From contig NC_086384.1 in assembly GCF_036588685.1 (NCBI RefSeq), positions 41,168,001 to 41,232,000 on the forward strand: 64,000 nucleotides of DNA. Reading direction: 5' to 3'. A program made the translations under genes and the position numbers. Position 1 is the first letter of the stretch. Each line of letters begins with the position of its first letter. The DNA comes from Mytilus trossulus. Taxonomy: Eukaryota. Of the stretch, positions 5,201-56,500 are shown one piece after another. Under the pieces are notes generated by a model. That model saw only the letters and a list, made by a program, of their open reading frames with translations. It was not told the DNA's origin and made no database searches.

Positions 5201-8200
5201 CCTTTTTAAAACGTTTTTTTTTGTATTCTTTATATTTATCTACCTATTTACTCTCTACTTGTTGCCTCCCTTTTATCTGTATCTCTGCAATTATTCCATA
5301 TTCAGTAATTCCTATTTATAAAATAAAAGCAGATTTATCACTAACTGAATATAAAGTGATATACGTAGAACATAGTCAAGCTTGTATTTTTATTGTAGGA
5401 TTATGTATGGCAGACCAAACACTAGTTGGTACAGAATTTCTTTTTGTTGTTCCGATTGAGTACAGTTCGTCATCAATTAGCGAATCTTACATTATCATTA
5501 ACAACCATGAAACAAATAGGGCAGTTGTTATGGTAAAAACCCCGAACGACCCTAATCTGATTGATAACACACTCGACATCACTGGTAATTATTTTCGAAA
5601 AATGATTGTTCCAGAAGATGTGTTCAGTAGATTATTCGAACCTGCACAAGAAAACTGCATTTATATTGAAGTGACGAACAGGGTCAACATTGACGTCACA
5701 GTTGTCATCGTTACTCCGTATGATTCGGATTCTTTCTTCGTGTTCCCTCTTTCACTTCTAGGAAATACCTATAATGTAATCGCACCAAAAATGTCGAACG
5801 ATTCGTATTCGTTTGTGTCTATAGTTTTCCCCCATTTAAGCAACCAGGTCACTCTTGCCTTCAATAAAATGGTTGATCTTGTGGATTTAAATCAACCAAT
5901 AGGTACGAGCATTTATACTTTGTTAAACAACACCACCGCCGAGATCAATATAAAGTACGCATACAGTGTGTTTAACTTGTGGTATTATAACGATTTGACT
6001 GGTCTGCAAATTACAAGTAACACAGATATAGCAGTGTTTGCAGGGTGTGCCCACACGACCTTTCTGAGTAATGGAAATCCTAAAATCTTTATGATTGACC
6101 AAGTACCACCAACTCTCGTCTTGGGACGAGATTATATTATAAGCAGATTTGGATCTCATCATCTTGCAGGTGTATTTATCCTTACAACTTCTGATAATAC
6201 TTCGGTGGTAGGGTACAATGAAGATAGTTGCATGTATGACACGGGTAATACTAATGATTGGGATTACTATGAAATGAACTCAGATATTCTTTTCATTTCA
6301 TCCAGTGAACCAATAGCAGTTGTCCATATTCTAGAATCGGGTACGTCAAAGCCGTCAATGTATTATGCCACTCCATTGGATGGATTTCAGAAATCTTATG
6401 AATTTTACATTCCACCTTCATACGAACAGTCGGATATTTATGGGGTCACAGTTTTCACGTCTGACTCGAGCAGTATCATGCTGAATTCTCAATTGGTCCA
6501 AGCTACTTCTACAGGTTCAAATGACCTGGACATTGGTGGTGTGTCGTATTCGGCGCTAGTATATACCCCTGATCCCGGAAATGTCAACAGAATAAACCAT
6601 ACCAGTGCAAACTTTGGTGGTTATGTATACTACGAACATAATTCATCACTGATTTTACGCACTCTTGGAGGACATTATTTCCAGAGAAACGTGGTAGGTC
6701 AACTCTTAAGAGCTATTTTCCTAACGCATATAATTCATAGAAAAGGTTGAATTGCTTGGTTTGTTTATATAAATGTTTGCTCAAGAATTGTAAATAAGAT
6801 TGAGCATATATGTGTTGCACTTCATTGTACATATCACAAATGTGGCTTCAATAAACTACAGATCCCTTATTGAAAAAGTAAAAACACAAAAATACTAAAC
6901 TCCGAGGAAAATTACATTACATTTCAATTTTTTTTATACTTACATATACCAATCAAGATAAAATTCCAATATCACGGCCCAGGCTTTGTCTAAATTTCAA
7001 ACAAATATATTGCTTACATGAATTATTTCTTAAATAATGCGTATTTTATTTTGAATGTTATTGGCCCTGGAGAGTTGTTATAGATAATCCAAACTCCATA
7101 AGATGATAAGACGTGTGCATGGTGTGATGCTACTTAACATTTGAGGTTGAACATCTAATCAATTCTTATACACTTACTGTAATATCTGTTTTCTGTGTAT
7201 GACAAAATTACATCAAACATGTGGTGCACACTGAATCATGTTATTTACAGGTGTGTACCGCATGTTTATGGTTATTTCGAACGACAGAAAAAATATTATA
7301 GGTACCCTAATGAATAAATCTAAAATTCCAATTTTGAGGAAAATTAAAATCACGAATAAACGTTGATGGCGTCAAGTGATAAGTTACAAAATAATGTCAA
7401 TCAATACATCCAAAATTTAATTTATTTATAGAACTTACAATCTTTTTTAACAGACTTGCAAGCCTGGTAGCAACGTCCCGGGATGCATTACACCAAACAC
7501 CAATTGTCCATATTCAGGTAAAGAGGTAAAGATTAGTCATACAAAAAAAGACAACTAAGTTTTTGTTCAATAAGGATCTATTTTTACTTAATATCAGAAA
7601 TCAATGGCAGGTTTCTTTATTTTTGTGCTATATGTTTAAAAATAACGCTGAAATGTGGTTTGTTGGGATAACTTGTAGATTTGTTTACAGAGCGTCGTAT
7701 TCAAATAAAAAGTTTTATTTTAATAATAGAATAAAGACAGATATATATTGCATAAATCATTCTTCAATCACAGCTGTGTCACATATGAAAACATAATAAT
7801 TTTATATAGATCTTTAAACGTTAAAAACAATCTCGTGAACTAATGGAAAAACGCTAATTAGGTTTTTTTTTTTATCATTTTGAATTCGAGCGTTACTGAT
7901 GAGTCTTTTGTAGACGAAACGCGCGTCGGAGCAAATACAAAACTTCAATCTTGGTATCTACGATGAGTTTATTTCCACAATCAATCGCTGAAATCGGACA
8001 ATATTTTAACGCACTTAAAAAACTGGGCATGAATATATATTATTTTTCAACTTCAGCTCCTACAATTAGTATTGCGAATATAAACTCCAGTATCATTTAT
8101 GGTGGCAATATTACCTTAAATTGTCTTATTGTTTCACATCCTGCCATTACGACATTCAGCTGGGGTATCAACACATCGACAGGATTTACTGACATCACTT

Positions 8201-11200
8201 CCGGTGGATCGTACACAGTAGAAACTGATACCACTACAGACAACGGAAGAGCCAACATTTCAATGACAATTTCCAATGTCACTTTTATCGAGAAAACATA
8301 CACATGTCGTGCTGGGAATAATATTGGGAACGAATTTGTAAGTGTGACGTTACATGTTCTTGGAGGTAAGATTTCATTGTAAAAAATCAGTGGTGCTTTC
8401 ATTTCAAAAAAAGTATATACTTCTGGCTTATAAACACATAATTAAGAAGATGTGATTTGATCGCAAATTAGACAACCTTTTATCAGAGAACAAATGTAGT
8501 AGACGGAGGCATCTGCAGGTCACCGTACGAACTTCAAAAATGAGCATAACCTATACCGAATATAATAAGCAATATGTAAAAGGTTAATAGACTATTTCAG
8601 GCATGATCAGGGCCGACAGAAGATTGTTATTATTTAGCCGTTATGTTTCATTCTTTACAAAGTTTGATGTTACGATAGACTGTCATCAATGTTTATAACC
8701 GCACTTGGTGAGTCGTGAAAGCCTTGGATGGGTAAAACTACTTCTTTAAAATTTGTGTTTGTGGATTTTATGCTGAGCATGCATGCAATAATCAGATGCG
8801 CTAGAAATGAATCGTCAGCTCGGAAATCTGCTCTCACAATCATGCATGACGCGGTAAAATTTCCATTACCAAATACGTTAGTACAAATAACAGCCTTCAA
8901 TCAACCAATCTTGCGTTTTTGTATTATTCTTTACTAAAATAGTTACATAGTTTTACCTTTATCATTTACTTGATATGAAAAAACCGATATGTCATGTTGA
9001 GGACGGATATTTGCAACTAAAATAAATGCTAGTTGCGTGAGAAGGGTAAAATATCCAGCGTCGCTTTCACAAGCGTGCACACTAATCAGTGTGAATAGTA
9101 TGTTTGAATGTTGACAGTGTGTTCTGACAAAACTAGTTCTCATAGGGTTCTGTGTCAAACGATTTTTCCCAAAGACAGCTAATCTGTTCCAAACACTAAG
9201 AAAAATAGCAGTGTGAATTCACATTACTATAAGACGTGTCACGGTACTTATCTATCCCGAATTCATGTATTTGGTTTTGATGTTATATTTTTTATTCTCA
9301 TATGATTTTGTCTAATGCTTAGCGTTTCTGTGTGAGTTTTGGAAAGCGGTATACTACTGTTTTCTTTATTTGCTAATTTAATATTTTTTTGGTTTAATGT
9401 TCAAGACAGTAAATGAGGCAATAACAATCAAAACCAAGGAGTAAACAAAGACTCTCAAAACCAAAGGACATTTACATCAAGTTATAAATAATAAATAAGA
9501 AACAACACAAACTCCACTAAAAAGTGAAATCAGGTGCTCCGTAAGGCTAAGCATTTCCTGCACCGTATACGGCATCCGTGGTGTTATTTCTTTGTTCAGT
9601 TTGGTAATGATGGAAGGTCATTATGACTGTGGAAACATATATGAGGAGGCACTATTTGCACGGATTACCAAATGATATGTTCTACAACACAAAATTAGTA
9701 TATACGTTACCTATTTTCAGATACGGAACCGGATGTTAAAAGCCCTAAGTATAGAACAGCTCTTAGTGGCGATATCATTTCGCTGCCATGTGTTATCGAC
9801 GCGACACCTAACGTCGACTATGTTCATTGGACCCGAACGACAAGCAATAAGATGATAGACATGACCAAAACCAGATACAGTGGATCGACAACTTCTTCAC
9901 CATCTTTAAATATAGATCAAGCTCGTACTTCCGACACCGGAGTATATAACTGCCACGCAAACAATACTGTCGGTAGTACTAAAGGACCTGATTTGGTATT
10001 AGTAGTTTACGATAGCACTGCCGGTAAGATTCTAAATTATTTTGTTGTAAATTCATAGAACGTGTAAATTTACCGATTTTTTTCGATTGATCACTTAAGT
10101 TTTTTTAAATGTCGAGCTAAAACAAATTATGCATTTTATGACAATAATTGAACAAACTACATTTTCAGTTTTCAGGGACAGGCCTTGAGAGGTCAGAGTG
10201 TGACTTTTTGTGTACATAATGTTTATGCTTCTGGTATTGATATTATTCTTAAAAAGACAGACTCGTCGTCAGTAGATGTTTCGTGTTGAATCAATGTTCT
10301 TTATTTTATATTGTAACTATCCAGTCTCCCATGCAGAGTTGTCGATCCTTGCTTTCTTTTAATTAAGAGAGAGTAGGGACCGACAATTGTGCGTGTTAGA
10401 ATAATACTTAATAGACTTGACAATGTATACTATATAATATAACCAAACAAAATAACATTAACATGTTTAGGTAGGAAGTGATCGTGTACCTTGCTCATGT
10501 TTTCATATCAAAATACATTTTGCAGTAAACGATGGTGGGCAATCCACGATAACAGGATCGAATGTAACAGCAGCAACAACAATAACTACAACAACAACAA
10601 CAACAAAAAGTCCTATTCTGGTTAACACAATAACAACTACTTATAATACAGCAAACACATTAAGTATGACACCTTCCGTTTCTGCAAGACCTTTAACCTT
10701 ATCTGCAAACTCAGGAGAAAATGTTACCCTAACATGCGATGTTATCGGACCTGTGACGTCAGTCTACTGGCAAAAGTACCAGGATGGAATGGTGATGAAA
10801 ATTGACCCAACCATGAACACAAATAAAACATCTGGTGCAACGACTGTAGTACCATCATTGCAGATCTACGGTGTGTCTCTGTACGACAAAGCTTTATACA
10901 AATGCTTTGCTGTTAACATTGATAAAACTGGATCCAGTGACTACGTGAGCCTTGACATATTAGATCGTAAGTACTTAAATAATTAGAAATCAAAGACGAC
11001 GATGATGATGGAATATGATAGGTTCAGTCATTCTTCTCTATTTCTTTTTTTTTATAATTAAATTATTGTTAATACTGGAGAGCAAATCTCATTATCACAT
11101 ACCGTACTTTGATTATAAATATGGGGAGGATGATGAGGGTAATTTCTTCTCCGTACAACACAATTTGTCGAAATGCGCATCTTGTTCAGTGCAATTGCTG

Positions 11201-11947
11201 CTGTTCATGTTATTAAATCAGTGGTTTATTCACAAGTATACAATATCAAACACGCCATTAATTACAAACAATTCAAACTATCGTTACGACGACGACAACG
11301 ATGATGATAACGACAATCATGACGATGACAGTGATGACGACAACGATGATGATAACGTCAATCATGACGATGACGGTGACGAAGACAACGATTTTTGACT
11401 TAATAATCATTCAAATTAAATTTACCAGAGTTTTTTTAGGGAAGAAGTATCAATTTGTCAAAGAGATTACTTGATTCTGATAGTGTCTACTTGTACTACA
11501 TCAACTATCGTGCTATATCAAAACTGTGTCAGCATAATACAGGATTACAGGTCACAAATAAGTACCACGAACCAAAACAAATGGTGTTAGATACAACACA
11601 CACTTAATTAAAAGAACACATGCCGTCTACAATACTCAATTTGATCTACTTGTTTGAATTTGTATTTTATAGAAACGTTGGTGACTTTTGTTCACATCCC
11701 TGAGGCTAAAAAGTCAGGTTACTTGGATAAAAAAAAGAGTGAAATAGAGAAAGGACTACGTGTAAATAGAAAGATATTGTCATCTTCAATACGACGTACG
11801 ACTTGTGCACCAGATTCACGACCATCAGCAACAGCAGCAGGAGCCGTTGGCGCATCATTAATGGTTGTTGTTTTTGGAACAATGGCGCTGATGGACATAC
11901 CCATTTTGATATCGGCTGTGAAAGCCTTGTTTATAATTAAACATTGA
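2218..11947 (+). CDS. Spliced single-pass membrane protein, ~908 aa: signal peptide, IgGFc-binding-protein N-terminal-like domain, Cys-rich linker, Ig, Ig, Thr-rich segment, Ig, conserved juxtamembrane/TM tail. Exons 2218-2257, 5399-6693, 7454-7517, 8057-8365, 9721-10023, 10526-10966, 11673-11947
   Basis: All junctions are GT-AG with compatible phases (1,0,1,1,1,1); total 2727 nt = 909 codons. Leader MLICVFVLYALKF/GLCMA-DQ. GTEF, 'PLSLLGNTY', 'IAVFAG', 'DQVPP..LGRDY' and 'SSSEPIAV' motifs are typical of IgGFc-binding N-terminal domains. Each Ig exon has C..W..YxC. Hydrophobic C-terminus. Confidence 0.82.
3629..4466 (-). mobile_element. Degenerate 3' fragment of a Penelope-like/non-LTR retroelement (RT C-terminus plus 3' region), inserted into a short interspersed repeat
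   Basis: The - strand reads FRYIDDV ... LYDKRDDF ... SSNIPAAPAYGVYIS ... RKFYGRHHELVDRY with stops. The host repeat is split at GACAA (3624-3628 / 4467-4471). Confidence 0.8.
5399..6693 (+). CDS. Large exon encoding an IgGFc-binding protein N-terminal-like domain (gene 1, coding exon 2)
   Basis: Acceptor ttgtag|GA at 5398/5399 and donor GTG|gtaggt at 6693; lies within ORF 5221..6750; motif resemblance to FCGBP N-terminal domains. Confidence 0.82.
8057..8365 (+). CDS. Ig-like domain exon 1 of gene 1
   Basis: ttcag|CT ... G|gtaag, phase 1-1; GGNITLNC..W..YTCRAGN. Confidence 0.85.
9721..10023 (+). CDS. Ig-like domain exon 2 of gene 1
   Basis: tttcag|AT ... G|gtaag; GDIISLPC..HW..DTGVYNCHANN. 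Confidence 0.85.
10526..10966 (+). CDS. Thr-rich linker plus Ig-like domain exon 3 of gene 1
   Basis: ttgcag|TA ... C|gtaagt; poly-Thr followed by GENVTLTC..YW..DKALYKCFAVN. Confidence 0.85.
11286..11392. repeat. Degenerate (GAC/GAT)n trinucleotide microsatellite in the last intron of gene 1
   Basis: GACGACGACAACGATGATGAT... Confidence 0.85.
11673..11947 (+). CDS. Terminal exon of gene 1: conserved LSS.IRR.TCA.D.RPS juxtamembrane motif plus TM helix
   Basis: tttatag|AA phase-1 acceptor, stop TGA at 11945-11947; aligns without gaps to the tails of the two lectin genes. Confidence 0.8.
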
Positions 11948-12480
11948 TACCAGTAGATAATGGGGTTTTGAACAATGACGATGTTAAGTATGCCTGTTCT
12001 TATATCTCTTAAATTGGTTGTTGTTAGTTGTTATGGTTCATAAATGTTTCTTGTTTTTATAAAGATTAGATCGTTGGTTTTTCTGTTTTTCTGATTTCAT
12101 ACCAGTAATTTTTGTGGCCCTTTATAGCTTGGTGTTCGGTATAAGACTATGTTCCGTGTTGAAGGCCGTACTTTGACCTAATATGGTTTACCTTTTATCA
12201 ATTGTTACATTGTGGAGATCGGTCTAATTGGCCATCATAACACAACTGCTTATATCTATTTATTTCTTAAATAGTTTAATAGACGCTTAATAATAATTAC
12301 TAATTTCAATCTGAAGGTGCCTTCATTTTTGAAAAAAATGAACGAGTATTTTTTACGAGAGCGTTTTTATAAATCACAACTTTTTTCATAATCATCGAAC
12401 CTACACGGACCTGTGAATATATCGCCACAAACATTACAAAACAAATATTTGACAAAAACCTTCAGACTTTTTATTCTAAA

Positions 12481-15400
12481 TCACGTTCGTAATGTCTTGA
12501 AAAACACATATATGTTAACTATATCAATGATAATGATTAAAGAGAACACAGCAACAATAATCAAAGCTCCAGTATATCCAATGTAAGCCGACGACGGTCG
12601 TGGGTCGTCCGCGCAAGTAAGGCGGCGGATTGTAGACGATAATACGTCTTTGTCCACTTCCAGCAGCTTTTTTAATTCTTTAATTCTCTGTTCAATATTT
12701 ATTGTTATGTTTAAAGATAAAGAACATGTGCATATGCAAAGACCATTTGTTGTTCTGGAAATTACACCCGTAGTAGTTTCCGTTATTTCTTGGTTGTAGG
12801 TTATTGTTTCTGTCAAGGTTGTTTCTGGGATATCATGATTAGAGGTCGTACTTATGACCATGTTTGTTGCAGTTGAAACCTGTTGATGCACAGTTGATGT
12901 TAACATGTCGTTTGATATTGATCCAGCTGTTGATGTTTGGGCTATTGATGGTTTGGCTGTTGTTGATTCAGCTGTTGAAATTGTGTTGGCTGTTGATACT
13001 ATGTCTGTTGTTGCTTGAGACGTTAGTATTTCTGAATAAAAGTACGGAGAAAGATTGGATACGATCTTAAAGCATGTTATTAATAATCTAATAATTAATA
13101 AGCTTATAATTGAATATTTTGAATGCAAAAACACTTCAATTCACCTTTTTGTCATCTTTTTATATATCTTATACTTGTGTTTGTTGGTTCGCTATCAAGA
13201 ATCAAAATAAAAGGAATGACATTAACGGCATATTAAGTTTAAATGCAGAAAATTAATATGTTTTTGGGCAGTTTTGAATAAAGAACGTTCATATTTGTCA
13301 CTTCTTTAACGAATCAGCAACACAATCCAAAAATTGATAATTCACAATTCACATATAAAGGAAAAAGAGCTCTCTCTTGATATGGATACGTAAATGCTCG
13401 AGTTGTGTAAATTTGCCAGATTGTATGTATTGAAGATCTAGATGTAAAAAAAAACTATGTAAATGAATATCCGGAACATCTTAACATCATTTGTAAATGC
13501 AATCGAAATTTCAAAATTTGCAATTAATAGACATGATAGCATTAATAATCTTACCTTCACAAACTGGTGAGCTACTATCCCATGTACCATCGATTAGACA
13601 AGTTCTCGTCAGATTCCCATACACCAACGCGTGTCCCATGTCACATGTGTAATGACACGTGTCACCATACATATCTCCAGTTTGACTTATCAACGTTGAT
13701 CCGCTGTTCACGATTGGTGTTTGACATGGTATGACTGAAAAATTCACCAAATTGTATGCGGGTCAGGATAGGATTTCACATTAGGGAATGGGGAGCAATG
13801 TGCAGAATAAGGGACAAAAATAGAAAGAATAAAACATAATGAGTGTTAAAATATAGGAAAAATAAAAATGATAGACAAAAAAATGTAAAGAATAGAAAAA
13901 CTGGCTAAACAAATTACAAAAATGATGGATCTTTACTCAGACCCTGATGTCCTGGCCCTAAAAGTAACTTTTATTCGAGTCAATTTCTTAAAGATTATTT
14001 ATTCTTAATTAAACTGTTTATATAGAACAGACTTAGATTTTGTCTTTCGTCTTAAAAAACTCATGCGTGACGCAAAAATAAAAAAAGATCAAACAAGTAC
14101 GAGGCGGAAGATTTAAATCTATATGGTAAAACTATAATAATTTTATATAATATAATAGGTAATTTTGTAATCTATTTATTATGCCCTAATTTATATTTCT
14201 ACAATCATCAACCTATTGTTTGTTACCGTTGAGCAATTTGGGCATGAGCGGTAAAACACCAAAGAAATCAAAATTGTAAAATATTTTCTGTTAACTTTGA
14301 TCAAATTGAAATAATCGGTAAAACACAAAAAAAAATATTTCTACAGTCATAAACTTACTTTCTGTTACTGTTGAGCAAATTGACATACGCAGTGATGAAC
14401 ATAAAGAATGTTTCCATAAACCATAGGGCTGCGAAATGGTGATACAATTTGTAATTATCAACTGGGTTTCCAAAGGATCCCAATTCGTCCAGTCTTGTGT
14501 CACTCCTTGATGGGTTTCCACTCCACCTGTGTTTTCTACATATCCTATATAGTAAGTCCCTAAAGTTGTTAGGCTTCTGTATCAAATGAATAAATAACTG
14601 CTTGAACTTTATACAAATAATTATACTACAACAGAGCAAGAAAAGTCGACGTGTGAGCAAAATTTGTTTCCGCAATATGTTTTGTCTTAATTGTTAAATG
14701 TATTGTTTAGTTTTAATTTATATGTGACTTAGAAGATTTAAGGTGCTTGGTCTCGCAACATGTAAGTGGTCTTTTCGATTCCTCCGAGTCTAAAACTATC
14801 CTTGATGCTTCTTGATTTCTGTATTATCATAATATGCTATTATTTCAAGAAATATGACGGAACGAAATAGTATTCTAGTTATTCAACTGGCTCATTTTTT
14901 TTAATGTAAAAACCAATTCTAACGTGAAAACAAACTGTCTGATTCATATTCAAACAAATGAAGAAATAAAAAAAAACCACCCCACACGTATGATATAAGA
15001 TAGTCCAGATTATCAGTGGAAAATTTGTAAGGCTGTAGACATTTCATTTGAACGAACTATTTTTCTCCCAATGATTTCGTACTTGCATTGACAATGTAGT
15101 TGTGATAAACATTTCCATTTCTTCTTTTTTTCAAGCTTAATCTTATATTGGTTACTAGAAATGTTTTGTGTTAACAACATACCGTATTTTCATTAGCCAA
15201 TTAACCACTCTCTGTGCTTCAAGATTTGGAATAATGGAATAGTCCAGTCCACATGCACCTACAGCCGTTCCAAGAGTAGTATCAATCCAATAACAGTATA
15301 GTTTTAACCCGGATGTGTATGAAACTCCATTTTCCCTACAGTCGCCATAGTCGAATTTGATAACTACAAAAAAAAGATAGTTTGTATACTGGTCCTGTCG

Positions 15401-18400
15401 GAAAGTAGTACATATTCAAAAAAGAAGTTCCTACGCATAGCTGTGTCTTTGTCATTTGGTGATATGTTTGGGTAGTTTTGGTATCAAATGAAAGCTTTTG
15501 GACCCATTTTGTCTGATAGAAACTTTATGTGTTTGTACTGTCAAACTTTCGGTAACCAGTACGCTCTAATATGCAATTTAAAACATTGATTTTTTTCAGC
15601 ATTAGTCAGGATAACATTGAAAGCAACGGGTTTATGAAAGAGCGGTTTTATACCTTTACTAGAATCACCTATTCGAGCACGTGTAAACGATTACGTGCGA
15701 AGGGAACATTTCAAATGGCGACCCTTTTTAGGTAAGGAAACACTTGATTTAGTATATCTTTAAGTTGTTGGAGTCAAATGCGCACTTTATAATAACTAAT
15801 CCTAAATATAATGCATATGAAAAAATAACTGACGCTACATATCTCATTAGCGGTCTTAAATATCAAAGTTGATCCTAAACATCCTTTTAGAAGAAAAAGA
15901 CCAAAATCGATCATGATTTATTTAGAAGAAAACAAATACAAATGCACAAAAGACCGTTAGAAACATAAGATACTTCAAATTCAATAAAAAACGAAGTTGA
16001 AAATGTTATAGAGGTTAAGCTAGCTTTAAAACAATGCACCACTTTCTATATAAGGAAAATTATGTACCAAGTCAAAAATATGACAAGTTTTTTTTCCATT
16101 CGTTTGATTTGTTTGAAATTTTGATTTTTAGAATTGATAAAGAATTTTCGATTTTGAATTTTCCCTGGACATCAGTACATATTTAATCTAGTTTATTTGT
16201 AAATATATAAGCTTTACTCTAACAGCGTGTATATGTATTATCTTAACACAGAAATTCCTTTATTTTATCAGAGTCTTCAAAAATGTACTGCTAATGAATT
16301 GTTTTGTTCTCGTACTTTAATTTTTCCGACGGTTTTCCAAATGCAGTGACTTTCACTTTGACACCTTTCGTTAGAAAATCGCACAGTGCAAAAATGTGCA
16401 CAATGAAATCGGATCACCTTCCAGGAGTCAGCACTTGTGTGTTCACATTAATTATCATTGATGTGACTATAACTATGAATTTACTGTTTACAAAACTTTG
16501 ATTGTTTTTAAATACTAAGGCTTTTCTACCTAAGGAATAGTTTACTGACGCTGTATTTGGCAAAACATTTATTACTTTTTGGTTCTCTATGCTCTTCGAC
16601 CTCGTTCTTTATTTGACCTTTTTAATTGTTGAATTATCTTTTGAAGACAAAACGCACGTCTGGTGCAAAAACAAAATTTCAATCCTGGTATCTATGATGA
16701 TTTATTCATATGACTTTAAAAACAAATAAAATTACCTAAAGAGCAGAAGGCTTCCCTGTAAAGCGTACAAGGTATGTCATCCCAATGTCCATCAATGAAG
16801 GCAACACATGTATTATTCGGGTCCATTGCGTCAGAAAACGCCGAATAAGACTGCGGCTTTCCATTTACGTCTATAACTGTGTACTGTGTGGGTGTTGTGT
16901 AATTTAATGTGTATCCAATATGGTATATAGCCCCGCTCGAAGATCCCCTTTAAAATAAGATTCCTCGAATATTAACATGATTAATTATGCTTGTATATCT
17001 GAGTTATGACTCATTTAGATATTTTTCTTTTCTATTTCATTTTTCTATTTTCTTAATGCATTTCTTTATTTATTCATTTTAATGTTTAATTTTGAATGCA
17101 AAATAATCGAGCCTTCATTCGAACATTGTTACCTGTTGAGCCATTATATTGCAATAACATGTGTTTCTTTAAGATACAGAGGAAGAGTTTGATACGCATC
17201 GTGAAATGCTCCTTTGATGAATTATTCTGAGTTAATGTAAGCAGTGGAGTTAACATTTGATAGCTCATAATATGGTTAAATATCGCGCTTAATTTTACTC
17301 GGTTGTTCTATAACACTTTCACGTTAACAGCGGTCTAGTATTGACAGTTCAATGCCAATAACAATTAATAGAAACTCATGCATCTACTTTAACGTCTAAT
17401 CGACTGTGTCCTCTTTCCTGCATTGCTGACCTTTACATTACTTATCTTGTAACTGTTAGAATTTTATTCACGATTCTTTAAAATATAATTACTATACCTA
17501 TCACTTGAGGTTTCAGGCGTGTTTTCCTACCTTTGTAACGCTAACTGGTGTAAAATATAATTACTATACCTATAACTTGAGGTTTCACGACTGTTTTCGT
17601 ACCTTTGTAACGCTAACTGGTGTAAAATATGATCTGCACCACTATCAGGTACCCATGCGTAATCAAACATTCCACAGTGACCCGTGCTATGTTGCTGAGG
17701 AGAAAAGTCAATCCAATTGCATATGACATAGTTCTTATATGTATAAGAAGCTCCCATCAATTGGCAATCTTCGTAATTGAATGTTGGTACTATGAAAAAT
17801 AATATAAAATATAGACAAAAGTTATATAAGCTCTCAATCAGAGTACAAGGCAGTCCTCTAATAAACAGAGGCGCGAATGTAATCGTCTACATTGTATTAA
17901 TATCATAAAGCATTTTTAAATGTTTATATTTTTTATTCATAGAAAAATTAAAATAATCCGTTTTAGAATCTAATCAAAACCAGGTTGTATTTTCAAAACG
18001 GGTAAGTTTCGATTGATGTGAATTTACAACAATTGAAATTCAACCAATGGCGTCATGATACTTTGTACATTAAAATCACTCATAGTACATTAGATTCTGC
18101 AACGACTGTGCGATAAATTATGATCAGATCATGTTCATGTATAACTGTATAATAACATACTAAATTTTATGTTTTCAATATATAACTGAGTTGAATCAGT
18201 AAGTATTGATAACATTCAGATTAATCTCCGTGTAATTTATTTGTGTATGGTTATTTTGTTCAGTAGCATATAGTTATTGGTAATTAAGTGGATCCGAAGC
18301 AAACATCAGCTAAATTAATTTGGATTCGCTATCGAGTAGATTGATATTTAAAGTCATAAGATATATGTACAGCTTTTGTCGATCGAGGGACCTCTCTGGT

Positions 18401-28940: not shown

Positions 28941-29021
28941 ATAATATCCCATTCTTCAAAATATATATATACTATCAATCTCAATCAAAATGTTTTGCAG
29001 AAGAGATATATGTTAATTATA

Positions 29022-32000
29022 TCAACGATAATGATCGATGTGAACAGTACCGATGATGATAGCTCCAGTATAGCCAATGTAAGCCGACGACGGCCGTGGA
29101 TCATCCGCACAAGTAAGGCGGCGGATTGTAGATGATAAGACCTCTTTGTCCACCGTCAGGATTTTTTTTAATTCTTCAATTCTCTGTTCAATATCAATTG
29201 TCATATTTGCAACTAGGGAGCATGCACAAATGCAAAGATTAGATGTTGTGCCGGAAGGTGACAACGTGGTGGTTTCTTCAACTTTTTGAGTATTGGTTGT
29301 AGTCTCCATGACGATGGTTGTTGATGTTGATATGTCGCTCGATTTTAGTTCAGGTGTTGATATCACTTCCGTTGTTGTTTGGGATGTTTCTACTAATACA
29401 AAATGAATTCTAATGACTTTATAGTTGTAATTAAGGAATGAGCTTCACTAGATTTTATTACAAACTTCAACATTTCAGTTATTTCATTTATACTGCAACT
29501 AGTTGTGTTTATTTCCTAAATATAATAACATAGCTTTGAGTTGTGCAATGTCAATTTCATCATGGAACACCTTTTCCGCGATCAAGGGTTCGTTAAGGGA
29601 CAAAAATAAGTTTGAAAGGAGTAGGTCCGGTAAGACCACTTTTTGGCCCCAAAATATAGCAGTTTTACAAAATTGTTAAAATGTAAACTTTTATAAATTA
29701 ATTGAACAGTAGAATGCTTCTGCTACATAGATATGGGCTGCTTTTGACAATACACTGCACATATATCGGGTACTAGCACCATTAAGTCATGATAAATCAC
29801 TGAAATCTTCACAATTCTAGCAGTTTATTAAAACTTTAGACGGATTTCGTATAAAACGAAAGTGGCCGCATTCGTGTTCATCCTTAATATTAAAATGAAA
29901 GTTGTATTTTATGATAATACATAACATATATAAAGGTTGATGATGAACAGGGATGCGGCCACTTTCATTTTTGACAAAAACCATCTGAAAAGTGGCATTT
30001 TTGGCATATTTGGTAGATTTTTCATATTTGAGCTTGAATCGGATCGTTTTTAATGACAAAATCAGTTAAAATCTTTCACATAAACTAATTGAATCAAATA
30101 GAATAAACACTTAAGTGTTTAAAAAGTGGTCAACATCTTTCGGCAGATGAACCTGAAATTTGAGGCCAAAATCGGTCCTTACCGGACAGTTTACGGATTG
30201 GATCATATTTTTTAAATTCATACTTTTCTATGAATGCTGATTTATATGTCAAAAATAATAGATTGTGAGCATGTATTCTATTGGCGAAACGGATTGCTTT
30301 TAGACTTATTTGGTCATCTTAGCGTTTTTCTGAATATCACTTTGAAGTAAAGCTTAAATCTATAAAAAAAAATATGAACATTTGGGATATAGTGTAAATA
30401 TTTTACGAGAGAAAAAAAAACTATTTATTTTTTTGCCTGACGGAGTATAACCTAAGTTTTTTTTTAACAATCTCAACATGTATTACGTATATAGTACTAC
30501 ATGTATGTAGGTTTTGTTTTGGATAGCATTCATTTTTGTATTGAAATGATACAACATTCTACATCCATTTGTGCATTTTGTTGATGGTAGGTACATCATT
30601 ATTTATGGCAATTTGTACGTCGAATATCTTTTTTTAAATTATGCCCCTCTTATGGTGTCCACGTATTAACCTAATCACATATTGTATGTCAACATAATAA
30701 TGAAATCATCATTTTTTTTTAATAATCATGAAATATTTGGTCTGCTTATAATCAATCAATCACTATATAAACGGCAAAGAATCACATAATCAAAAAGCCC
30801 ACGAGGAGGCTCTTGTATGTATTGACACCTTCAATCATAAGCCATGACAAATAATAAAATGCGTAATCTATACAAGTGAGACAGTGAGCGTTCGTTTAAC
30901 TTACTACTACAGACTGGTGCACTGTAGTCCCAAAATCCATACATTTGACAAGTTCTCGTTAGATTTCCGGACACCAACACACGGCCTATGTCACAGGTGT
31001 AATGACATGTGTCACCATATATATCTCCGGTTTGACTTATCAACGTTGATCCATCGTAAACGACTGGTGTTTGACATCGTGTGACTGAAAAGGAAAAGGG
31101 AGATATAGATTACAAAAACAATGTCTCTGAATCACACAAAGGAACACACAGTCTTTGTGTAACTCTATACCGGGGTTCATGTTATTCTATTCAGAATTTT
31201 CATGTGTTATTTTTTAAGGTCACCATCACGAATTTGTAAATTTGCGATGCCCTCATGGTCTACGTAGCCACATAATCACTGAATCATATATCATAATTGA
31301 AGCAAGATAATAAAAAATACAGTCGAAGATTATCAAATAATCGAACAAACATAAAATATTTGTTCTGGTAAACTTGCCGTGTCGAGTCAACGGATTTTAT
31401 AATTTTTGTTGTTGAAATCCATAAGCTACTGTTGTTTCTAATGGCCACCAGCTATATGATTGGGACTATGATAATTCGTTTACAAACAGCAAACGTGTAG
31501 CGTTGGAGCACTTTTTGTACCTGTCAGGTACACACTTCCTATTTTTCGATACTTTGAAAAATTCAATAGACTGATCATCAACAAGTGAACTTTTTATTAA
31601 CTCACAGCAGTTATACAGTGGTAAGTTGTAACGGTGAGTATGTTTTGAATCCGTAAAAAAACCTACCTCAACCTTGTCAATATGTTAAAATGCACTAAAA
31701 AACCTTGTATGCATACTAGTACATTTTAACAACTGAAAAAAAATAAGTAAATATTTGGTCAGCTGGTTGTAAGTGATTCTCTAAAACTGTAGATATGCCA
31801 GACATTAATTTTTTACCCATATATTGCCAATGACGGATGTGGCTTAACTTAGAGCGACAACACTTGCATTCTTGGCACACATTAGCGATTCATAATTAAA
31901 AAAACAAATTTCATCTCGTTCCTCACTTGGAAAGAATCAGTTTAACAAACAGTATACTGAACAAAATTTGAATCTCAAATTTCTCCTTTTGTGAAACAGT

Positions 32001-48460: not shown

Positions 48461-49367
48461 CTACGCATCTATAAAATTCATAACTGGTTTGTTCGACTTT
48501 CTGCTTTTGCAAGGTATATACGATTTCACAATATTCCTGCACTCTTCAAATCTGAATATGTATATGAAGGGATTTACTATATGCTGCATAAATGCCAGGA
48601 TTTTTATCGGATATGCCAGCAGATGTTTGGTCTGTATATAAACATCGTCATCTATAATCTTAATCACTGTTAAAACAAAACCAGGAAAAGTGCAAAACAC
48701 CATGAGAGAACATACTATTAGAATTGAAATTGTCTTTCCATAATGTTGCTTAAAGAATTTCCTCTTCCTCGGATAGAAGTTAAAAGCCATTTTTTTTAAT
48801 TTGGCTTTGTCCATATCGATATAATAAAACGGAAGAAGATGTCAAGCTCACGGCCATTATAAGGCAAACAATACAGGAAAAGACATCCGAAATATCTTCT
48901 AAAATCATGTGATAATGTTCCTGATACAGCGACGCAATAGCTAACACCAGATGACAAACTGTAAATATCCATATACTATAGCAAACATGTTTTACTTTTT
49001 CGTCTGTGATGTTCATAAGATAGGCATTTGGAAATGCGACGGAAATTAATCGCTCTATCGCTAAAGTTGTCGTAAATAGGTATGAAGCTGTCGTTATAGT
49101 ACGCGATATTGTTATTATCCAAATTACAGGAATATAGACACAGAAGCAATTTATTATCCCTGGTAAAAAGATAACGATACCAAGCAAGCCATCTGACAAA
49201 GCGATGTGGCTTATACACGTTTTTATTTGTGACACAAGTTTTTTGGCTTTAGCTAATATAAATAAAGCAAAGCAATTTATACAAAGTGAAATTGAGCTTA
49301 ATGCTACAGCAAGAATTCTAATTTGTAATGATCCATAAGTAAACTGACATGTTTCATTGTTGTCCAT
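48461..49367 (-). CDS. Intronless rhodopsin-like (class A) 7TM GPCR, ~301 aa after correcting a 1-nt frameshift at an A8 run (48790-48797); possibly a pseudogene or an assembly error
   Basis: ORF 49367-48780 gives TM1-5 (IALSD in TM2, LAIERLISVAFP at the end of TM3); ORF 48814-48461 gives TM6-7 (CTFP, NPFIY). Removing one A joins them in frame. Confidence 0.8.
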
Positions 49368-53528: not shown

Positions 53529-56500
53529 TTATTTCTTGGTCCATTCGTGGATGTTTCTCCTGGCACACACGGCGGCTTCACGAAACGGTAATCGTCTTTG
53601 TATGTTACTAGTTCCCGGTTGTTGAGTTTCACGTGTTTCCTTTGGGTGGATATTGTCACATATCTCTAAGGGATATAATTTGACGATCGGTCGTGAAAAG
53701 CGTCCGGATTTTGTTCTCACTTCGGCTGCTCTTGTAAGTCCATCATTTCCAGTTATTAAAGAATCAACGACTCCAATTGTCCATTTGTTTCTTGGATACT
53801 TGTCTTCGTGGATTTGAACAACATCTCCCACTTTAATTGTCTGGTCGTTATCTCCTGTTCGGGTGTGGTATTCACGTAGCGACGTAAGATATTCTGATTT
53901 CCATCGTGACCAAAATTGGTCAATTACGAAAGTTTGTAGTTCAGCACGTTTAGAAATGTCGCTTCTGTCTGTGAAACTTGTATTTTCGTCGATGTCTTGT
54001 CGTGGATACGGTGTAGTTGTAATCCTTCTCCCATAAAGCAGGTGCGATGGTGTCAAAGGTTCCTGATCCTCGATGTCGGTGGATACATACGTTAAAGGCC
54101 GATCGTTCAACACGGCTTCAATTTCGGTGACTATTGTTTGTAAATCCTCCAATGTAATGTACGATCTTCCAAGAACTTTTCGTAAGCACATTTTTGTTAG
54201 TCCTATCAAGCGCTCCCACCAACCACCATACCAGGGAGCTCGTTTTATTATGAATTTCCAAGTCGTTCCACATACGGATAACGCATCATTTAAGGTTTCA
54301 GATTTGGTTAGTCTCTCTAAAGTCTCGGATGCGGCCATGTATGTTGACGCATTGTCAGATATCATCACTCTCGGCAAAGACTTGCGGCTCGTAAATCTTC
54401 TGAACGCTTGTAAAAAAGATCTTTCTTTAAGATCTGTGACGACCTCTAAATGCACTGCGCGCGTTGACGCACATGTAAATAAGCATATGAATACTTTGCT
54501 CCCTTGTCCGTTATTGTCTTTAACATATAACGCTCCAGTAAAATCAACACCTGTGACGGTAAACGGTGGTGCTTCCATTAATCTTGTCTTTGGTAGAGGT
54601 GGAGGATCTGGCGCACTGTACGGTTTTCCGGTTACTTTACGACAAGTGACGCATTTACGAAGAACTTTTTTCACTTGTTGACGTATTTTAGGTATCCAAT
54701 AATTTTGGCGAATCTCGGTGACTGTGGCTAATACTCCTGAATGTTTTAAATTCTTATGAACTTCCGATATAAGCAATTCAGTGAAATGATAATTATTTGG
54801 TAATAAACACGGAAATCTTGAATTTTCACTAATTGGAGCATTATGAATTCTCCCGCGGCAACGAATAATTTCTTTCTCGTCTATATATAGTCGTAATTGT
54901 CGAATTAAAGTATTGGGTGTGTTCGATTGCGACTTCAAAGTCCTGATTTCTTTATCAAATGAAATCCTCTGAGCACTTATTATCCATTTTTCTGTTGCAG
55001 CTTGTAGTTCCTCGCATGTGATGAATTTGCTCTGTATTCTCTGTGAGCGTGATTTGCGGCAATTCGCTATGAATCGGTAAATCCACGAACTAACACGTAG
55101 TATCTTTGTTAATGTACTGTATCTCATAACATCCAGTATGCAATGAATGCCATGTGTATTATTCCCTTCAATTGTATTTGTAACGTTCTCCTCTTGATCT
55201 ATATTCGTTAAAAGAATGCATGTGTTAGGTGTCCACTGCGGCCAAGATTTTGAACAATTGATCCATTCCGGTCCATTAAACCACAGTTTAGCATCTGCTA
55301 GTTGTGAAGCGCTGATTCCTCTTGTCAATAGGTCTGCAGGGTTGTCATTCGTTGGACAATATTTCCACTCTGAATCCTGTGTTAAAGATTTAATTTCTGT
55401 AATTCTGTTGTGAAGGAATTTTTTCAAATGTTTAGTCGTTGTTAACCAGTGTAAAACTATTTGACTGTCCGACCAATACGTGACTTTGTTTATTGATAAA
55501 GCTGATTTTACGTGTGTTGCAATTCTAGCTCCTATCACAGCGGCCATTAGTTCTAATTGTGGTAATGTCAACGTCTTTATAGGTGCAACACGGCTCTTAG
55601 CAAATACTAATGTTGACTGCTGTCCATTTGTAATATAAACAGCTGATCCGTAGGCTTTCTGGCTGGCATCAACGAAAACATGTAACTGTTTTGGTTCATC
55701 TGTACTCTTAGTTAAAATCTGTCTCGGTAACTCTGTGTTTGTTGAAAATTCTAAGTCTCTAGCTAATTCCATCCACTGTTGTTGTACGTTTAACGGTAGT
55801 GGTTCATCCCACTCAAGTTTGTCTTTCCAGAGGTCTTGCATTAAGATTTTGGCCCTAACGGACACTGGCGAAAGTAATCCCATAGGATCGTAGATTCGAG
55901 ATGATTGACTCAGTATTTCACGTTTTGTTATGTTTGGTTCCTTAATATCTGTTACATTAACTTTATGAAAAGAAATTGTATCTTTTTCAGTGTTCCATAT
56001 CATTCCTAGTATTTTTACCGTTATGTTCTTTTCGGCTAAATTTTCGTTTTTTGCAATTTCAGTTAAATCACTGCAGTTTGAGCTCCAAGATCGCAAATTG
56101 AATCCTCCCTTTGACATGACATTTCTCGCATCCTTGAAATATGCAATGGCTTCGTCATAAGTCTCAACGCTTGACAGAATATTGTCTACATATAAGTCCC
56201 TTTTCATCGTTTGTGTTATACTATTTTCATTTTCGTCCAAGTGCTTAAGTAGAGTGGCATTTAAAATAAATGGTGAGCATGTTGCGCCAAACAATATCGA
56301 TTTAAACCTGTAAGTTGTAAGATTGCTACGTGGGTCGTCGGGGTCAGCTAGCCAAAAGAAACGTGTAGCGTCACGATCCTTCTTGTCAAGTCCTATCTGT
56401 AAAAATGCCTTTTCAATATCTGTACTGATACCATATTTTCCGATTCTGAATCGCATTAATATTTTCGTCAAGTCATTTAGATTTGGTGGTGTTGACATTA

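What the first reader, a model, noticed from the sequence alone, without database searches (positions are those of the whole stretch)
11673..13031. One conserved C-terminal anchor module is shared by unrelated immune-type ectodomains (IgGFc/Ig gene and both lectin-Sushi genes)
Seen: gene 1 ends EIEKGLRVNRKILSSSIRRTTCAPDSRPSATAAGAVGASLMVVVFGTMALMDIPILISAVKAL. Paralogue A ends ELKKLLEVDKDVLSSTIRRLTCADDPRPSSAYIGYTGALIIVAVFSLIIIIDIVNIYVFFKTL. They align without gaps at 27/63 identities, although the ectodomains share nothing. Paralogue B (~29000-29200) has the same motif. Invariant features are an amphipathic helix, LSS.IRR.TCA.D.RPS, GxxGA, an Asp at a fixed position in the hydrophobic segment, and almost no cytoplasmic tail. 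In all three genes it sits in a phase-1 terminal exon, the configuration that permits exon shuffling. I cannot assign it to a named domain. Inference: a plug-in sorting, processing or oligomerisation signal that defines a family of surface receptors. Possible roles are dibasic RR cleavage and shedding, Cys-linked dimerisation, or pairing with a signalling partner through the acidic residue (as charged TM residues do in DAP12/FcR-gamma complexes). This is the best candidate for an undescribed system in the window.
Basis: partly seen in the sequence, partly recalled or inferred. Interest (0 to 1): 0.85.

Follow-up and report, generated by a model that had tools for sequence, protein, structure and literature searches.

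The report
Unnamed mollusc membrane-anchor exon cassette
The shared tail is real: it is one copy of an unnamed, very conserved "stalk helix, juxtamembrane motif, membrane helix" cassette that mussels, oysters, scallops and snails have attached, as a last exon, to hundreds of unrelated surface-recognition proteins; what it does beyond anchoring is still unknown.

Summary
Gene 1 (IgGFc-binding + Ig) and lectin-Sushi paralogue A end in the same module, 27/63 identities without gaps. Paralogue B has the motif, but a 2-nt deletion breaks its membrane helix.

The module is not local:
- This 1.3-Gb genome, apparently Mytilus trossulus, has at least 150 copies on many chromosomes.
- A profile search of 1.84 billion proteins finds 2704 clusters.
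- All 27 named hits I looked up are molluscs, bivalves and gastropods. All are "uncharacterized" or carry spurious names.
- Partner domains include C-type lectin, Ig, IgGFc-binding, Sushi, EGF, TSP1, WSC, PAN and Ephrin-receptor-like.

Consensus: (CxCxC, NxT) helix, LxV[ND]KxxLSSxIRKxT[S>C]AxDxRPS[AS]xxIGxxG, 14 residues (mostly hydrophobic), D, then a short basic amphipathic tail.

It has no Pfam, PDB or literature match. The last exon starts in phase 1 in 23 of 24 copies, the classical exon-shuffling arrangement.

Conservation in the membrane helix lies on one face, which suggests helix-helix packing with itself or with a shared partner. That is inference: a homotrimer prediction gave no answer, and RNA reads could not be obtained.

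- The Cys is present in only 18% of copies.
- "RR" is usually RK.
- The Asp sits at the cytosolic end of the hydrophobic span, not in mid-membrane.

The parts
11673..11947 (+). Gene 1 terminal exon (phase-1 acceptor; stop codon 11945-11947). It encodes the whole cassette of the IgGFc-binding/Ig gene, without the CxCxC part.
   Evidence: 98.9% identical to residues 648-738 of XP_063408976.1 (P0030)
11777..11830 (+). Gene 1 juxtamembrane motif LSSSIRRTTCAPDSRPSA
11834..11896 (+). Gene 1 membrane helix AAGAVGASLMVVVFGTMALM plus the conserved Asp (11894-11896). It is followed by a 16-residue hydrophobic/basic tail up to 11944.
12481..13031 (-). Paralogue A terminal exon (phase-1 acceptor at 13032/13031; stop 12481-12483). 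It encodes a Thr/Ser-rich stalk, CICTC, an NIT sequon, helix, motif, membrane helix and a 13-residue tail.
12724..12738 (-). CxCxC (CICTC) of paralogue A. CxCxC or CxC lies upstream of the helix in 82 of 108 family members.
12649..12711 (-). Membrane-proximal helix of A (NITINIEQRIKELKKLLEVDK). Predicted helix, residues 16-31 of the 90-aa model.
12589..12642 (-). Juxtamembrane motif of A, LSSTIRRLTCADDPRPSS
12523..12588 (-). Membrane helix of A (AYIGYTGALIIVAVFSLIIII) plus the conserved Asp (12523-12525)
29022..29366 (-). Paralogue B tail ORF: stalk, CICAC, helix and motif (motif at 29085-29138). The frame breaks in the membrane helix because of a 2-nt deletion relative to A at about 29046/29047. 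The rest of the helix reads in another frame (28985-29110).
5869..6693 (+). Gene 1 IgGFc_binding exon (ORF 5221-6750; the M. edulis orthologue model starts further upstream in the same ORF)
8053..10966 (+). Gene 1 Ig exons (about 8053-8364, 9708-10022 and 10471-10966). The last one ends with a phase-1 donor.
13555..13734 (-). Paralogue A Sushi exon, phase 1-1, 180 nt, immediately upstream of the tail exon
14294..17886 (-). Paralogue A C-type-lectin-like exons. The second halves lie in the open frames 14294-14581 and 16719-16949 (weak Pfam hits). The probable first halves lie in 15158-15415 and 17530-17886.
   Evidence: Lectin_C E 0.008 and 0.024, below the gathering score
30906..31088 (-). Paralogue B Sushi exon

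Best explanation
Shown: the tail is a member of a large, unnamed molluscan protein module carried by a phase-1 terminal exon. From N to C it encodes:
- usually a CxCxC cluster and an N-glycosylation sequon;
- a membrane-proximal helix of about 20 residues ending in LxV[ND]K;
- a nearly invariant juxtamembrane linker, LSSxIRKxT[S/C]AxDxRPS[A/S];
- one membrane helix that starts IGxxG and ends, 14 residues after that motif, in a 97%-conserved Asp;
- a short amphipathic basic cytoplasmic helix (median 21 residues to the C-terminus) with no signalling domain or ITAM.

The cassette has been joined by exon shuffling to many unrelated extracellular recognition domains. Each becomes a type I membrane protein with the same stalk, membrane span and tail.

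Inferred mechanism: the cassette is more than a passive anchor. It is an assembly module. Its single conserved helix face (I44, G45, G48, L52, F56, I59/V60, D63, L67), together with the invariant juxtamembrane Asp/Arg linker, packs against other helices in the membrane. Those helices could be copies of itself, helped by the stalk helix and the CxCxC disulfides, or a common and still unidentified partner subunit. Because the tails are too short to signal, any signalling, sorting or release of these receptors would go through that shared interface. My odds are about 0.9 for the descriptive part and about 0.4 for the assembly mechanism; the confidence given (0.6) is for the statement as a whole.
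For: Reality and size of the family:
- The own genome has at least 150 scored matches of 297 candidates. E-values reach 1e-19 on other chromosomes.
- Among 1.84 billion representative proteins, 2704 clusters match at E<=1e-3 and 1574 at E<=1e-10, nearly always at the C-terminus.
- Gene 1's tail alone matches a scallop protein's tail at E 2e-14.

Shuffling:
- Pfam on 53 long hits gives Lectin_C in 20, Ig in 8, IgGFc_binding in 7, plus Ephrin_rec_like, WSC, PAN, Sushi, EGF, TSP1, HRM and Methyltransf_FA.
- The acceptor is phase 1 in 5 of 5 copies checked against near-identical protein models, and in 23 of 24 copies by a crude acceptor score.
- The donor and acceptor sites in the window are phase 1.

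Constraint:
- R38 and G45 are 100% conserved. D36, S25, S40 and D63 are 97-99% conserved over 156 copies.
- Snail and bivalve tails are almost the same despite unrelated ectodomains.
- Between A and B the 26-codon motif block has 7 synonymous and 0 non-synonymous differences. The preceding 22 helix codons have 3 and 6.

Conserved face: information content along the membrane helix has a period of 95-100 degrees per residue, and 6 of 2000 shuffles reach that.

Structure: the AF2 monomer (pLDDT 82) gives helix 16-31, helix 39-46 and one continuous helix 53-89 through the membrane span, the Asp and the tail.

Tails: median 21 residues after the Asp, amphipathic and basic, no ITAM-like motif in 144 tails; Pfam on the 53 long members found no cytoplasmic signalling domain.

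No name: there is no Pfam hit at E<=10, no PDB sequence hit and no named ESM-Atlas cluster. Of the 30 hits looked up, the 27 that carry a source name are 'uncharacterized' or carry spurious names.
Against: - No experiment or transcript data were available.
- The homotrimer prediction gave no answer. That counts neither for nor against.
- No partner was identified.
- Conservation of the extracellular helix shows no significant helical periodicity (672 of 2000 shuffles), so a coiled coil is not demonstrated.
- A conserved face could also serve recognition by a protease or a trafficking factor rather than stable assembly.
- The Asp lies at the end of the hydrophobic span, unlike the mid-membrane charges of known immunoreceptor assemblies.
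- Copy counts are somewhat inflated by a probable haplotig (scaffold C26 against C14) and by identical duplicates.
Confidence: 0.6

Rival explanations
1. Processing or shedding cassette. The invariant juxtamembrane linker (R-K-x-T-S-A-x-D-x-R-P-S-A) and the Gly-rich outer end of the membrane helix (IGxxG) would be recognition sites for a sheddase and/or an intramembrane protease, rhomboid or gamma-secretase style. Membrane-bound lectin and Ig receptors would then be released on demand as soluble recognition proteins.
For: - The highest conservation in the module lies just outside and at the outer end of the membrane helix (positions 24-48).
- Basic residues R29 and K30 sit 15 residues from the membrane.
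- Small and helix-weakening residues (PSA, G45, G48) sit where rhomboid-type substrates have them. That comparison is established knowledge recalled from memory, not tested here.
- The short tails carry no signalling domain or ITAM, which fits proteins whose active part is the ectodomain.
Against: - The furin consensus R-x-[KR]-R is absent.
- The S1P-type consensus R-x-hydrophobic-x fits only the roughly 30% of copies with Leu at position 31.
- Conservation runs along the whole membrane helix to the cytosolic Asp, on one face. A cleavage site alone would not need that.
- There is no experimental evidence of cleavage.
Confidence: 0.25
2. Plain membrane anchor. The cassette would only hold the ectodomain in the membrane and perhaps provide ER export or surface sorting. 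Its conservation would reflect common descent and frequent duplication rather than a specific interaction.
For: - Many copies are recent tandem duplicates or haplotigs.
- No partner, cleavage or oligomer was shown (one search gave no answer).
- The tails are short and variable.
Against: - Generic membrane anchors keep hydrophobicity, not sequence. Here R38 and G45 are invariant and D36 and D63 are 97-99% conserved across bivalves and gastropods, on unrelated ectodomains.
- Only synonymous changes occur in the motif between A and B.
- The conservation is periodic and on one face.
Confidence: 0.15
3. GPI-attachment signal. The C-terminal hydrophobic stretch would be removed and the protein transferred to a GPI anchor at one of the small residues of the motif.
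For: - Small residues (S, A, D) precede a C-terminal hydrophobic segment.
- Gene 1 and paralogue A have very short, largely hydrophobic ends.
Against: - Across the family the hydrophobic span is followed by a basic amphipathic segment, median 21 and up to about 50 residues. GPI signals lack such a segment.
- No position offers small residues at both omega and omega+2. The candidates give x35 (P/K/E/D), R38 or x42.
- The distance from the motif to the C-terminus is about 50 residues or more.
- No GPI predictor was available, so this rests on reasoning from the consensus.
Confidence: 0.03

Closest known systems
Phase 1-1 mobile extracellular modules of metazoan proteins (Patthy's exon-shuffling rule: Ig, EGF, Sushi, CTLD, TSP1 and others)
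   Same: - The cassette exon starts in phase 1 and follows phase 1-1 domain exons. The Sushi exon 13555-13734 is an example.
- It occurs with more than ten different partner domains.
- It is multiplied in tandem arrays.
   Different: - It is a terminal exon (phase 1 to stop), not an internal 1-1 module.
- It encodes a stalk, a membrane helix and a tail rather than a globular domain.
- To my knowledge, membrane spans are not usually listed among shuffled modules.
Membrane-proximal and transmembrane assembly regions of vertebrate immunoreceptors (TCR connecting-peptide motif, CD3 CxxC stalk, charged transmembrane residues pairing with DAP12, FcR-gamma or CD3-zeta)
   Same: - Diverse recognition ectodomains share a conserved stalk with a Cys cluster.
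- The membrane helix has a conserved acidic residue and one conserved face.
- The cytoplasmic tail is too short to signal.
   Different: - There is no sequence similarity.
- The acidic residue is on the receptor side and at the cytosolic end of the span, not in the membrane core.
- No adaptor is known.
- The resemblance is functional analogy recalled from general knowledge, not a tested relationship.
Immunoglobulin heavy-chain membrane exons (M1/M2)
   Same: Terminal exon(s) add an extracellular membrane-proximal segment, a conserved membrane helix and a very short tail to an otherwise secretable recognition protein.
   Different: - The Ig case works by alternative 3' processing within one gene. 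Here the cassette is a fixed last exon spread over hundreds of genes.
- I saw no evidence of alternative secreted isoforms.
C-terminal propeptide of ZP-domain proteins (furin site, external hydrophobic patch, transmembrane helix)
   Same: It is a conserved C-terminal processing and anchoring arrangement with a basic site close to the membrane.
   Different: There is no ZP domain, no R-x-x-R furin site and no external hydrophobic patch, so the cassette is not a member.

Membership tests
Any Pfam-A family | Significant match to a curated profile | tested here: not met
   hmmscan of the three tails at E<=10 gave only noise (best E 0.15, far below the cut-offs). No named ESM-Atlas cluster was found.
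Any protein with a solved structure | Sequence match of the family profile to a PDB chain | tested here: not met
   The best hits were GPCR membrane helices at E 0.3-0.7, which is hydrophobic noise.
Exon-shuffled phase-1 module | The intron phase at the module boundary is 1 | tested here: met
   Gene 1 and paralogue A were read directly. 5 of 5 copies checked against near-identical protein models are phase 1. 23 of 24 unique own-genome copies are phase 1 by acceptor score.
Exon-shuffled phase-1 module | The same module is joined to unrelated domain types in different genes | tested here: met
   Lectin_C, Ig, IgGFc_binding, Sushi, EGF, TSP1, WSC, PAN, Ephrin_rec_like, HRM and Methyltransf_FA occur among 53 long members.
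Charged-transmembrane immunoreceptor/adaptor assemblies (DAP12, FcR-gamma, CD3 type) | An ionisable residue inside the membrane core of the receptor helix | tested here: inconclusive
   Asp63 is 97% conserved. It follows a 17-19 residue hydrophobic span and precedes an amphipathic basic helix. AF2 draws one continuous helix through it. In gene 1 and A the segment after the Asp is also hydrophobic.
Charged-transmembrane immunoreceptor/adaptor assemblies (DAP12, FcR-gamma, CD3 type) | A partner chain with the opposite charge in its membrane helix and a signalling motif (ITAM) | not tested
   No candidate partner was sought or found. The receptor tails themselves have no ITAM-like motif (0 of 144).
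GPI-anchored proteins | The C-terminal hydrophobic segment runs to the end with no charged cytoplasmic tail, and small residues occupy omega and omega+2 | tested here: not met
   The median is 21 residues after the Asp, rich in Lys and Arg. No omega/omega+2 pair of small residues exists in the consensus. No dedicated predictor was available.
Furin- or S1P-processed precursors | Conserved R-x-[KR]-R (furin) or R-x-[aliphatic]-[LTK] (S1P) site | tested here: not met
   The consensus is R29-K30-[K46%/L30%/R14%]31-T32. No Arg is fixed at P1, and an aliphatic P2 occurs in only about 30% of copies.
Homo-oligomeric coiled-coil stalk | Predicted or measured self-association | tested here: inconclusive
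   The three-copy prediction scored 0.01 against a mark of 0.32, verdict 'no answer'. A heptad-like pattern L6, I10, I13, L17, N/D20, L24 can be read from the consensus, but conservation periodicity is not significant.

The most novel reading that the evidence does not exclude
The cassette would be the receptor-side half of a mollusc-wide modular surface-receptor system. Hundreds of different recognition ectodomains per genome (lectin, Ig, IgGFc-binding, Sushi, EGF and others) would share one invariant juxtamembrane and transmembrane docking interface for a common, still unidentified signalling or sorting subunit. This would be a functional analogue of vertebrate ITAM-adaptor pairing that arose independently and spread by exon shuffling.
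Probability: 0.2. Interest if true: 0.9.

Novelty: new variant of a known kind. Interest (0 to 1): 0.62.

Why it matters
Bivalves and snails have no adaptive immunity. They have very large, poorly understood repertoires of lectin- and Ig-type genes.

A single unannotated cassette turns hundreds of these per genome into membrane proteins. It has been held almost unchanged since bivalves and gastropods diverged. That gives a handle on a whole receptor class at once:
- One profile would annotate thousands of "uncharacterized" or mis-named proteins, such as "mucin-22-like", "semaphorin-5A-like" and "serine-rich adhesin for platelets-like".
- One set of point mutants (R38, G45/G48, D63) and one pull-down could reveal whether molluscs use a shared adaptor, a shared sheddase or self-assembly for these receptors.

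It is also an unusually clear example of a transmembrane segment behaving as a mobile exon-shuffling module.

Tried and rejected
- Complex prediction: three copies of the 90-residue A tail gave 'no answer' (score 0.01, mark 0.32, controls not run). This is not evidence either way.
- Word-seeded protein searches returned almost nothing beyond self and the orthologue. Queries were gene 1's tail, the 52-sequence tail alignment and a Lottia tail. Length and word limits explain this, so they say nothing about range. I could not establish whether the module exists outside Mollusca.
- Literature: six searches found no description. They included motif strings (RKKTSA, DDRPSA and others) and transmembrane C-type lectins of oysters. 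From memory, the oyster receptor CgCLec-TM1 might belong to the family. I had no sequence to test this.
- Transposon-mediated spread: an all-against-all blastn of 30 copy loci shows long shared flanks only between tandem paralogues or haplotigs, and otherwise short interspersed repeats. No common flank accompanies the exon.
- GPI signal, furin or S1P site, and ZP-type propeptide were considered and rejected on the consensus.
- Cys-linked dimerisation through the motif Cys was rejected as a family feature, since 28 of 156 copies have Cys.


Full report
**1. What is in the sequence**

Translating 11675-11944(+) gives TLVTFVHIPEAKKSGYLDKKKSEIEKGLRVNRKILSSSIRRTTCAPDSRPSATAAGAVGASLMVVVFGTMALMDIPILISAVKALFIIKH, followed by a stop. 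The ORF 12481-13134(-) ends ...CICTCSLSLNITINIEQRIKELKKLLEVDKDVLSSTIRRLTCADDPRPSSAYIGYTGALIIVAVFSLIIIIDIVNIYVFFKTLRT. They share 27 ungapped identities, and none of 200,000 shuffles reaches that.

A six-frame motif scan finds exactly three copies in the window. The third, paralogue B (ORF 29022-29366, minus strand), has the helix and the identical LSSTIRRLTCADDPRPSS motif. A DNA alignment with A shows a 2-nt deletion at about 29046/29047 inside the membrane helix. B therefore ends ...GAIIIGTVHIDHYR*, and the rest of the helix reads in another frame.

**2. Gene context and splicing**

Gene 1 carries an IgGFc_binding domain (E 3e-26) and Ig domains. Paralogues A and B carry Sushi domains. A also has two C-type-lectin-like domains, each split over two exons. 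As half-domains these score only E 0.008 and 0.024, below Pfam's cut-off.

One profile hit, P0030, is XP_063408976.1, "uncharacterized protein LOC134692454" of Mytilus trossulus. It matches gene 1's exons at 92-100% identity, apart from one short 29-residue piece at 76%. The exons lie at 5869-6693, 8053-8364, 9708-10022, 10471-10968 and 11672-11944. So the window is apparently M. trossulus, and the RefSeq model joins the tail exon to the last Ig exon. An independent M. edulis annotation (P0151) has the same junction...LDILDQTLVTFVH.

The donor is TTAGATC|gtaagt at 10966/10967 and the acceptor is ttttatag|AAACG at 11672/11673. This gives the split codon C|AA, which is phase 1. In A, the Sushi exon 13555-13734(-) is phase 1-1, and the tail exon starts at 13031 behind ttattcag, again phase 1.

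**3. It is not a local curiosity**

A profile of the three tails finds at least 150 matches in the window's own 1.3-Gb genome. That is the scoring cap, with 297 first-look candidates. E-values reach 1e-19 on other chromosomes. Many matches sit in tandem arrays, for example C14:41.25-41.47 Mb, C6:67.8-68.15 Mb, C14:25.48-25.70 Mb and C2:93.74-93.86 Mb. Some inflation is likely. Scaffold C26 is up to 97% identical to the C14 array over about 3 kb and looks like a haplotig, and two C5 loci are identical.

A profile of 18 own-genome copies was searched against 1.84 billion representative proteins. It gives 2704 clusters at E<=1e-3 and 1574 at E<=1e-10, with the match nearly always at the C-terminus.

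All 27 hits that carry a source name are molluscs:
- Bivalves: Mytilus (five species), Magallana, Crassostrea, Saccostrea, Pecten, Argopecten, Mizuhopecten, Ylistrum and Mactra. A Pinctada imbricata member appeared.
- Gastropods: Lottia, Batillaria and Nucella.

All are "uncharacterized" or carry spurious names, such as mucin-22-like, semaphorin-5A-like, ectin-like and serine-rich adhesin for platelets-like. The ESM Atlas likewise shows only unnamed, mollusc-dominated clusters. Whether the module occurs outside Mollusca could not be tested with the tools at hand.

**4. Anatomy of the module**

Over 156 copies in 150 representatives the consensus is ..EEL.eKI.eIKKeLtV[ND]K..LSStIRKkT[S/C]A.D.RPS[A/S]..IGyvG, then 14 mostly hydrophobic residues, then D, then ...L.
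- R38 and G45 are invariant.
- S25, D36, S40 and D63 are 97-99% conserved.
- L17, A34 and G48 are 90-94% conserved.

Upstream of the helix, 82 of 108 members with enough sequence have CxCxC or CxC, and 78 have an NxS/T sequon. Gene 1 lacks this part and is a divergent member.

After D63 comes an amphipathic segment. It is hydrophobic at +1, +4, +5 and +8 and basic at +6, +9 and +13. The median distance from the Asp to the C-terminus is 21 residues, with a 10-90% range of 13-45. No tail has an ITAM-like motif, 19 of 144 have YxxL/I/V, and 67 of 144 have a Cys in the first 25 residues.

An AF2 model of A's last 90 residues, built with a 52-sequence alignment, has mean pLDDT 82. It shows helix 16-31, a short helix 39-46 (SSTIRRLT), a loop (CADDPR), and one continuous helix 53-89 running through the membrane span, the Asp and the tail.

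**5. Evidence of constraint**

Snail and bivalve copies are almost identical through the motif and membrane helix although their ectodomains are unrelated. An example is Lottia LSATIRKKTSAVDNRPSAQSIGYVGVIILSTVFGLLILLD against Mactra LSSSIRKKTSAPDDRTSAQAVGYVGLVFLVVSLCSIVLLD.

Between A and B the 26 codons from VLSS to YTG differ at 7 synonymous and 0 non-synonymous sites. The preceding 22 helix codons differ at 3 synonymous and 6 non-synonymous sites.

Information content along the membrane helix is periodic at 95-100 degrees per residue, and 6 of 2000 shuffles reach that. The conserved positions I44/G45, G48, L52, F56, I59/V60, D63 and L67 therefore lie on one face. A passive anchor would keep hydrophobicity, not one face and invariant Gly, Asp and Arg.

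**6. Exon shuffling**

Pfam on 53 long members shows the following partners:
- Lectin_C in 20 members;
- Ig families in 7-8;
- IgGFc_binding in 7;
- Ephrin_rec_like, WSC and PAN in 2 each;
- Sushi, EGF, TSP1, HRM and Methyltransf_FA in 1 each.

No cytoplasmic signalling domain appears. A typical complete member (XP_063417660.1 / P0003) reads signal peptide, CTLD, Ig, CPCRC, helix, motif, membrane helix and a Lys-rich tail.

The acceptor of the cassette exon is phase 1 in all five copies for which a near-identical protein model fixes it. It is phase 1 in 23 of 24 unique own-genome copies by a simple acceptor score, against an expectation of one third. Many of these copies are related, so the count overstates independence. 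This is the classical phase-1 rule for mobile extracellular modules, here applied to a terminal stalk-plus-membrane-helix exon.

I found no common flanking repeat that would point to transposon-mediated spread.

**7. How it probably works**

Shown: the cassette converts secretory-type recognition domains into type I membrane proteins with a uniform stalk, membrane span and short tail, and it is under strong sequence-specific constraint.

Inferred, about 0.4: the conserved helix face plus the invariant linker is a helix-packing and assembly interface. It could bind itself, helped by the stalk helix and the CxCxC cluster, or a shared partner that supplies signalling or sorting.

Rivals:
- A shedding or intramembrane-cleavage cassette (0.25). 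The most conserved block lies at the outer membrane boundary. However, the furin and S1P consensus sequences are not conserved, and the conservation runs the whole span.
- A plain anchor (0.15). This is contradicted by the pattern of constraint.
- A GPI signal (0.03). This is contradicted by the basic tails.

The homotrimer prediction returned "no answer" and is not used as evidence.

**8.

Correct: the alignment, the phase-1 terminal exon, the unrelated ectodomains, the absence of a named domain, and the idea of a plug-in module.

To be corrected:
- The Cys is Ser in 82% of copies.
- "RR" is mostly RK.
- The near-absence of a tail is particular to gene 1 and A. The M. californianus orthologue of A has a longer basic tail.
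- The Asp is at the cytosolic end of the hydrophobic span.
- B is frameshifted.

**9. Novelty**

I found no Pfam family, no PDB relative, no named Atlas cluster and no paper. The kind of thing is known: a shuffled phase-1 module, or a receptor stalk and membrane region with conserved assembly residues. This particular cassette appears undescribed, as does its scale of hundreds of genes per genome and thousands of clusters in public data. I rate it a new variant of a known kind, with interest 0.62. The descriptive finding is solid and useful for annotation. The mechanism is open and directly testable.

Noticed in passing
window 28985-29366 (-): Paralogue B's cassette has a 2-nt deletion relative to A at about 29046/29047, in the middle of the membrane helix. 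Before that point the motif block shows only synonymous differences from A. B is a recent pseudogene, a soluble variant or an assembly error.
   Followed up: partly
window 53529-58964 (-): An uninterrupted 1811-aa ORF with CCHC zinc knuckles and protease, reverse-transcriptase, RNase H and integrase-like regions. It is a gag-pol polyprotein of an LTR retroelement. It coincides with the raised GC (0.38-0.39) and strong AT skew at 54-60 kb. Only observed; nothing was done with it.
   Followed up: no
window 48461-49367 (-): Two adjacent or overlapping ORFs (195 and 117 aa) that look like the halves of a rhodopsin-type 7TM receptor, with an NPFIY motif near the end. Not examined.
   Followed up: no
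G000 scaffold C26:2.48-2.70 Mb versus C14:41.25-41.47 Mb (loci L006, L008, L020, L022, L027 versus L012-L015, L018, L026): The cassette-bearing CTLD-Ig gene array on scaffold C26 is up to 97% identical over about 3 kb to the array on C14, so C26 is probably an unplaced haplotig. L016 and L017 (C5:7.57 and 7.68 Mb) are 100% identical over 3.2 kb.
   Followed up: partly
proteins P0001, P0002, P0010, P0011, P0012, P0091 (public gene models of Saccostrea, Argopecten, Lottia, Ylistrum): These models contain two cassettes, one of them internal. Because the cassette includes a stop-transfer helix and normally ends the gene, they are probably neighbouring tandem genes fused by gene prediction.
   Followed up: no
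window 11015-11398 (+), inside the last intron of gene 1: An ORF with a long Asp/Asn-rich low-complexity run (DDDNDDDNDNHDDDSDDDNDDD...). It is most likely a simple repeat in the intron, not coding.
   Followed up: no
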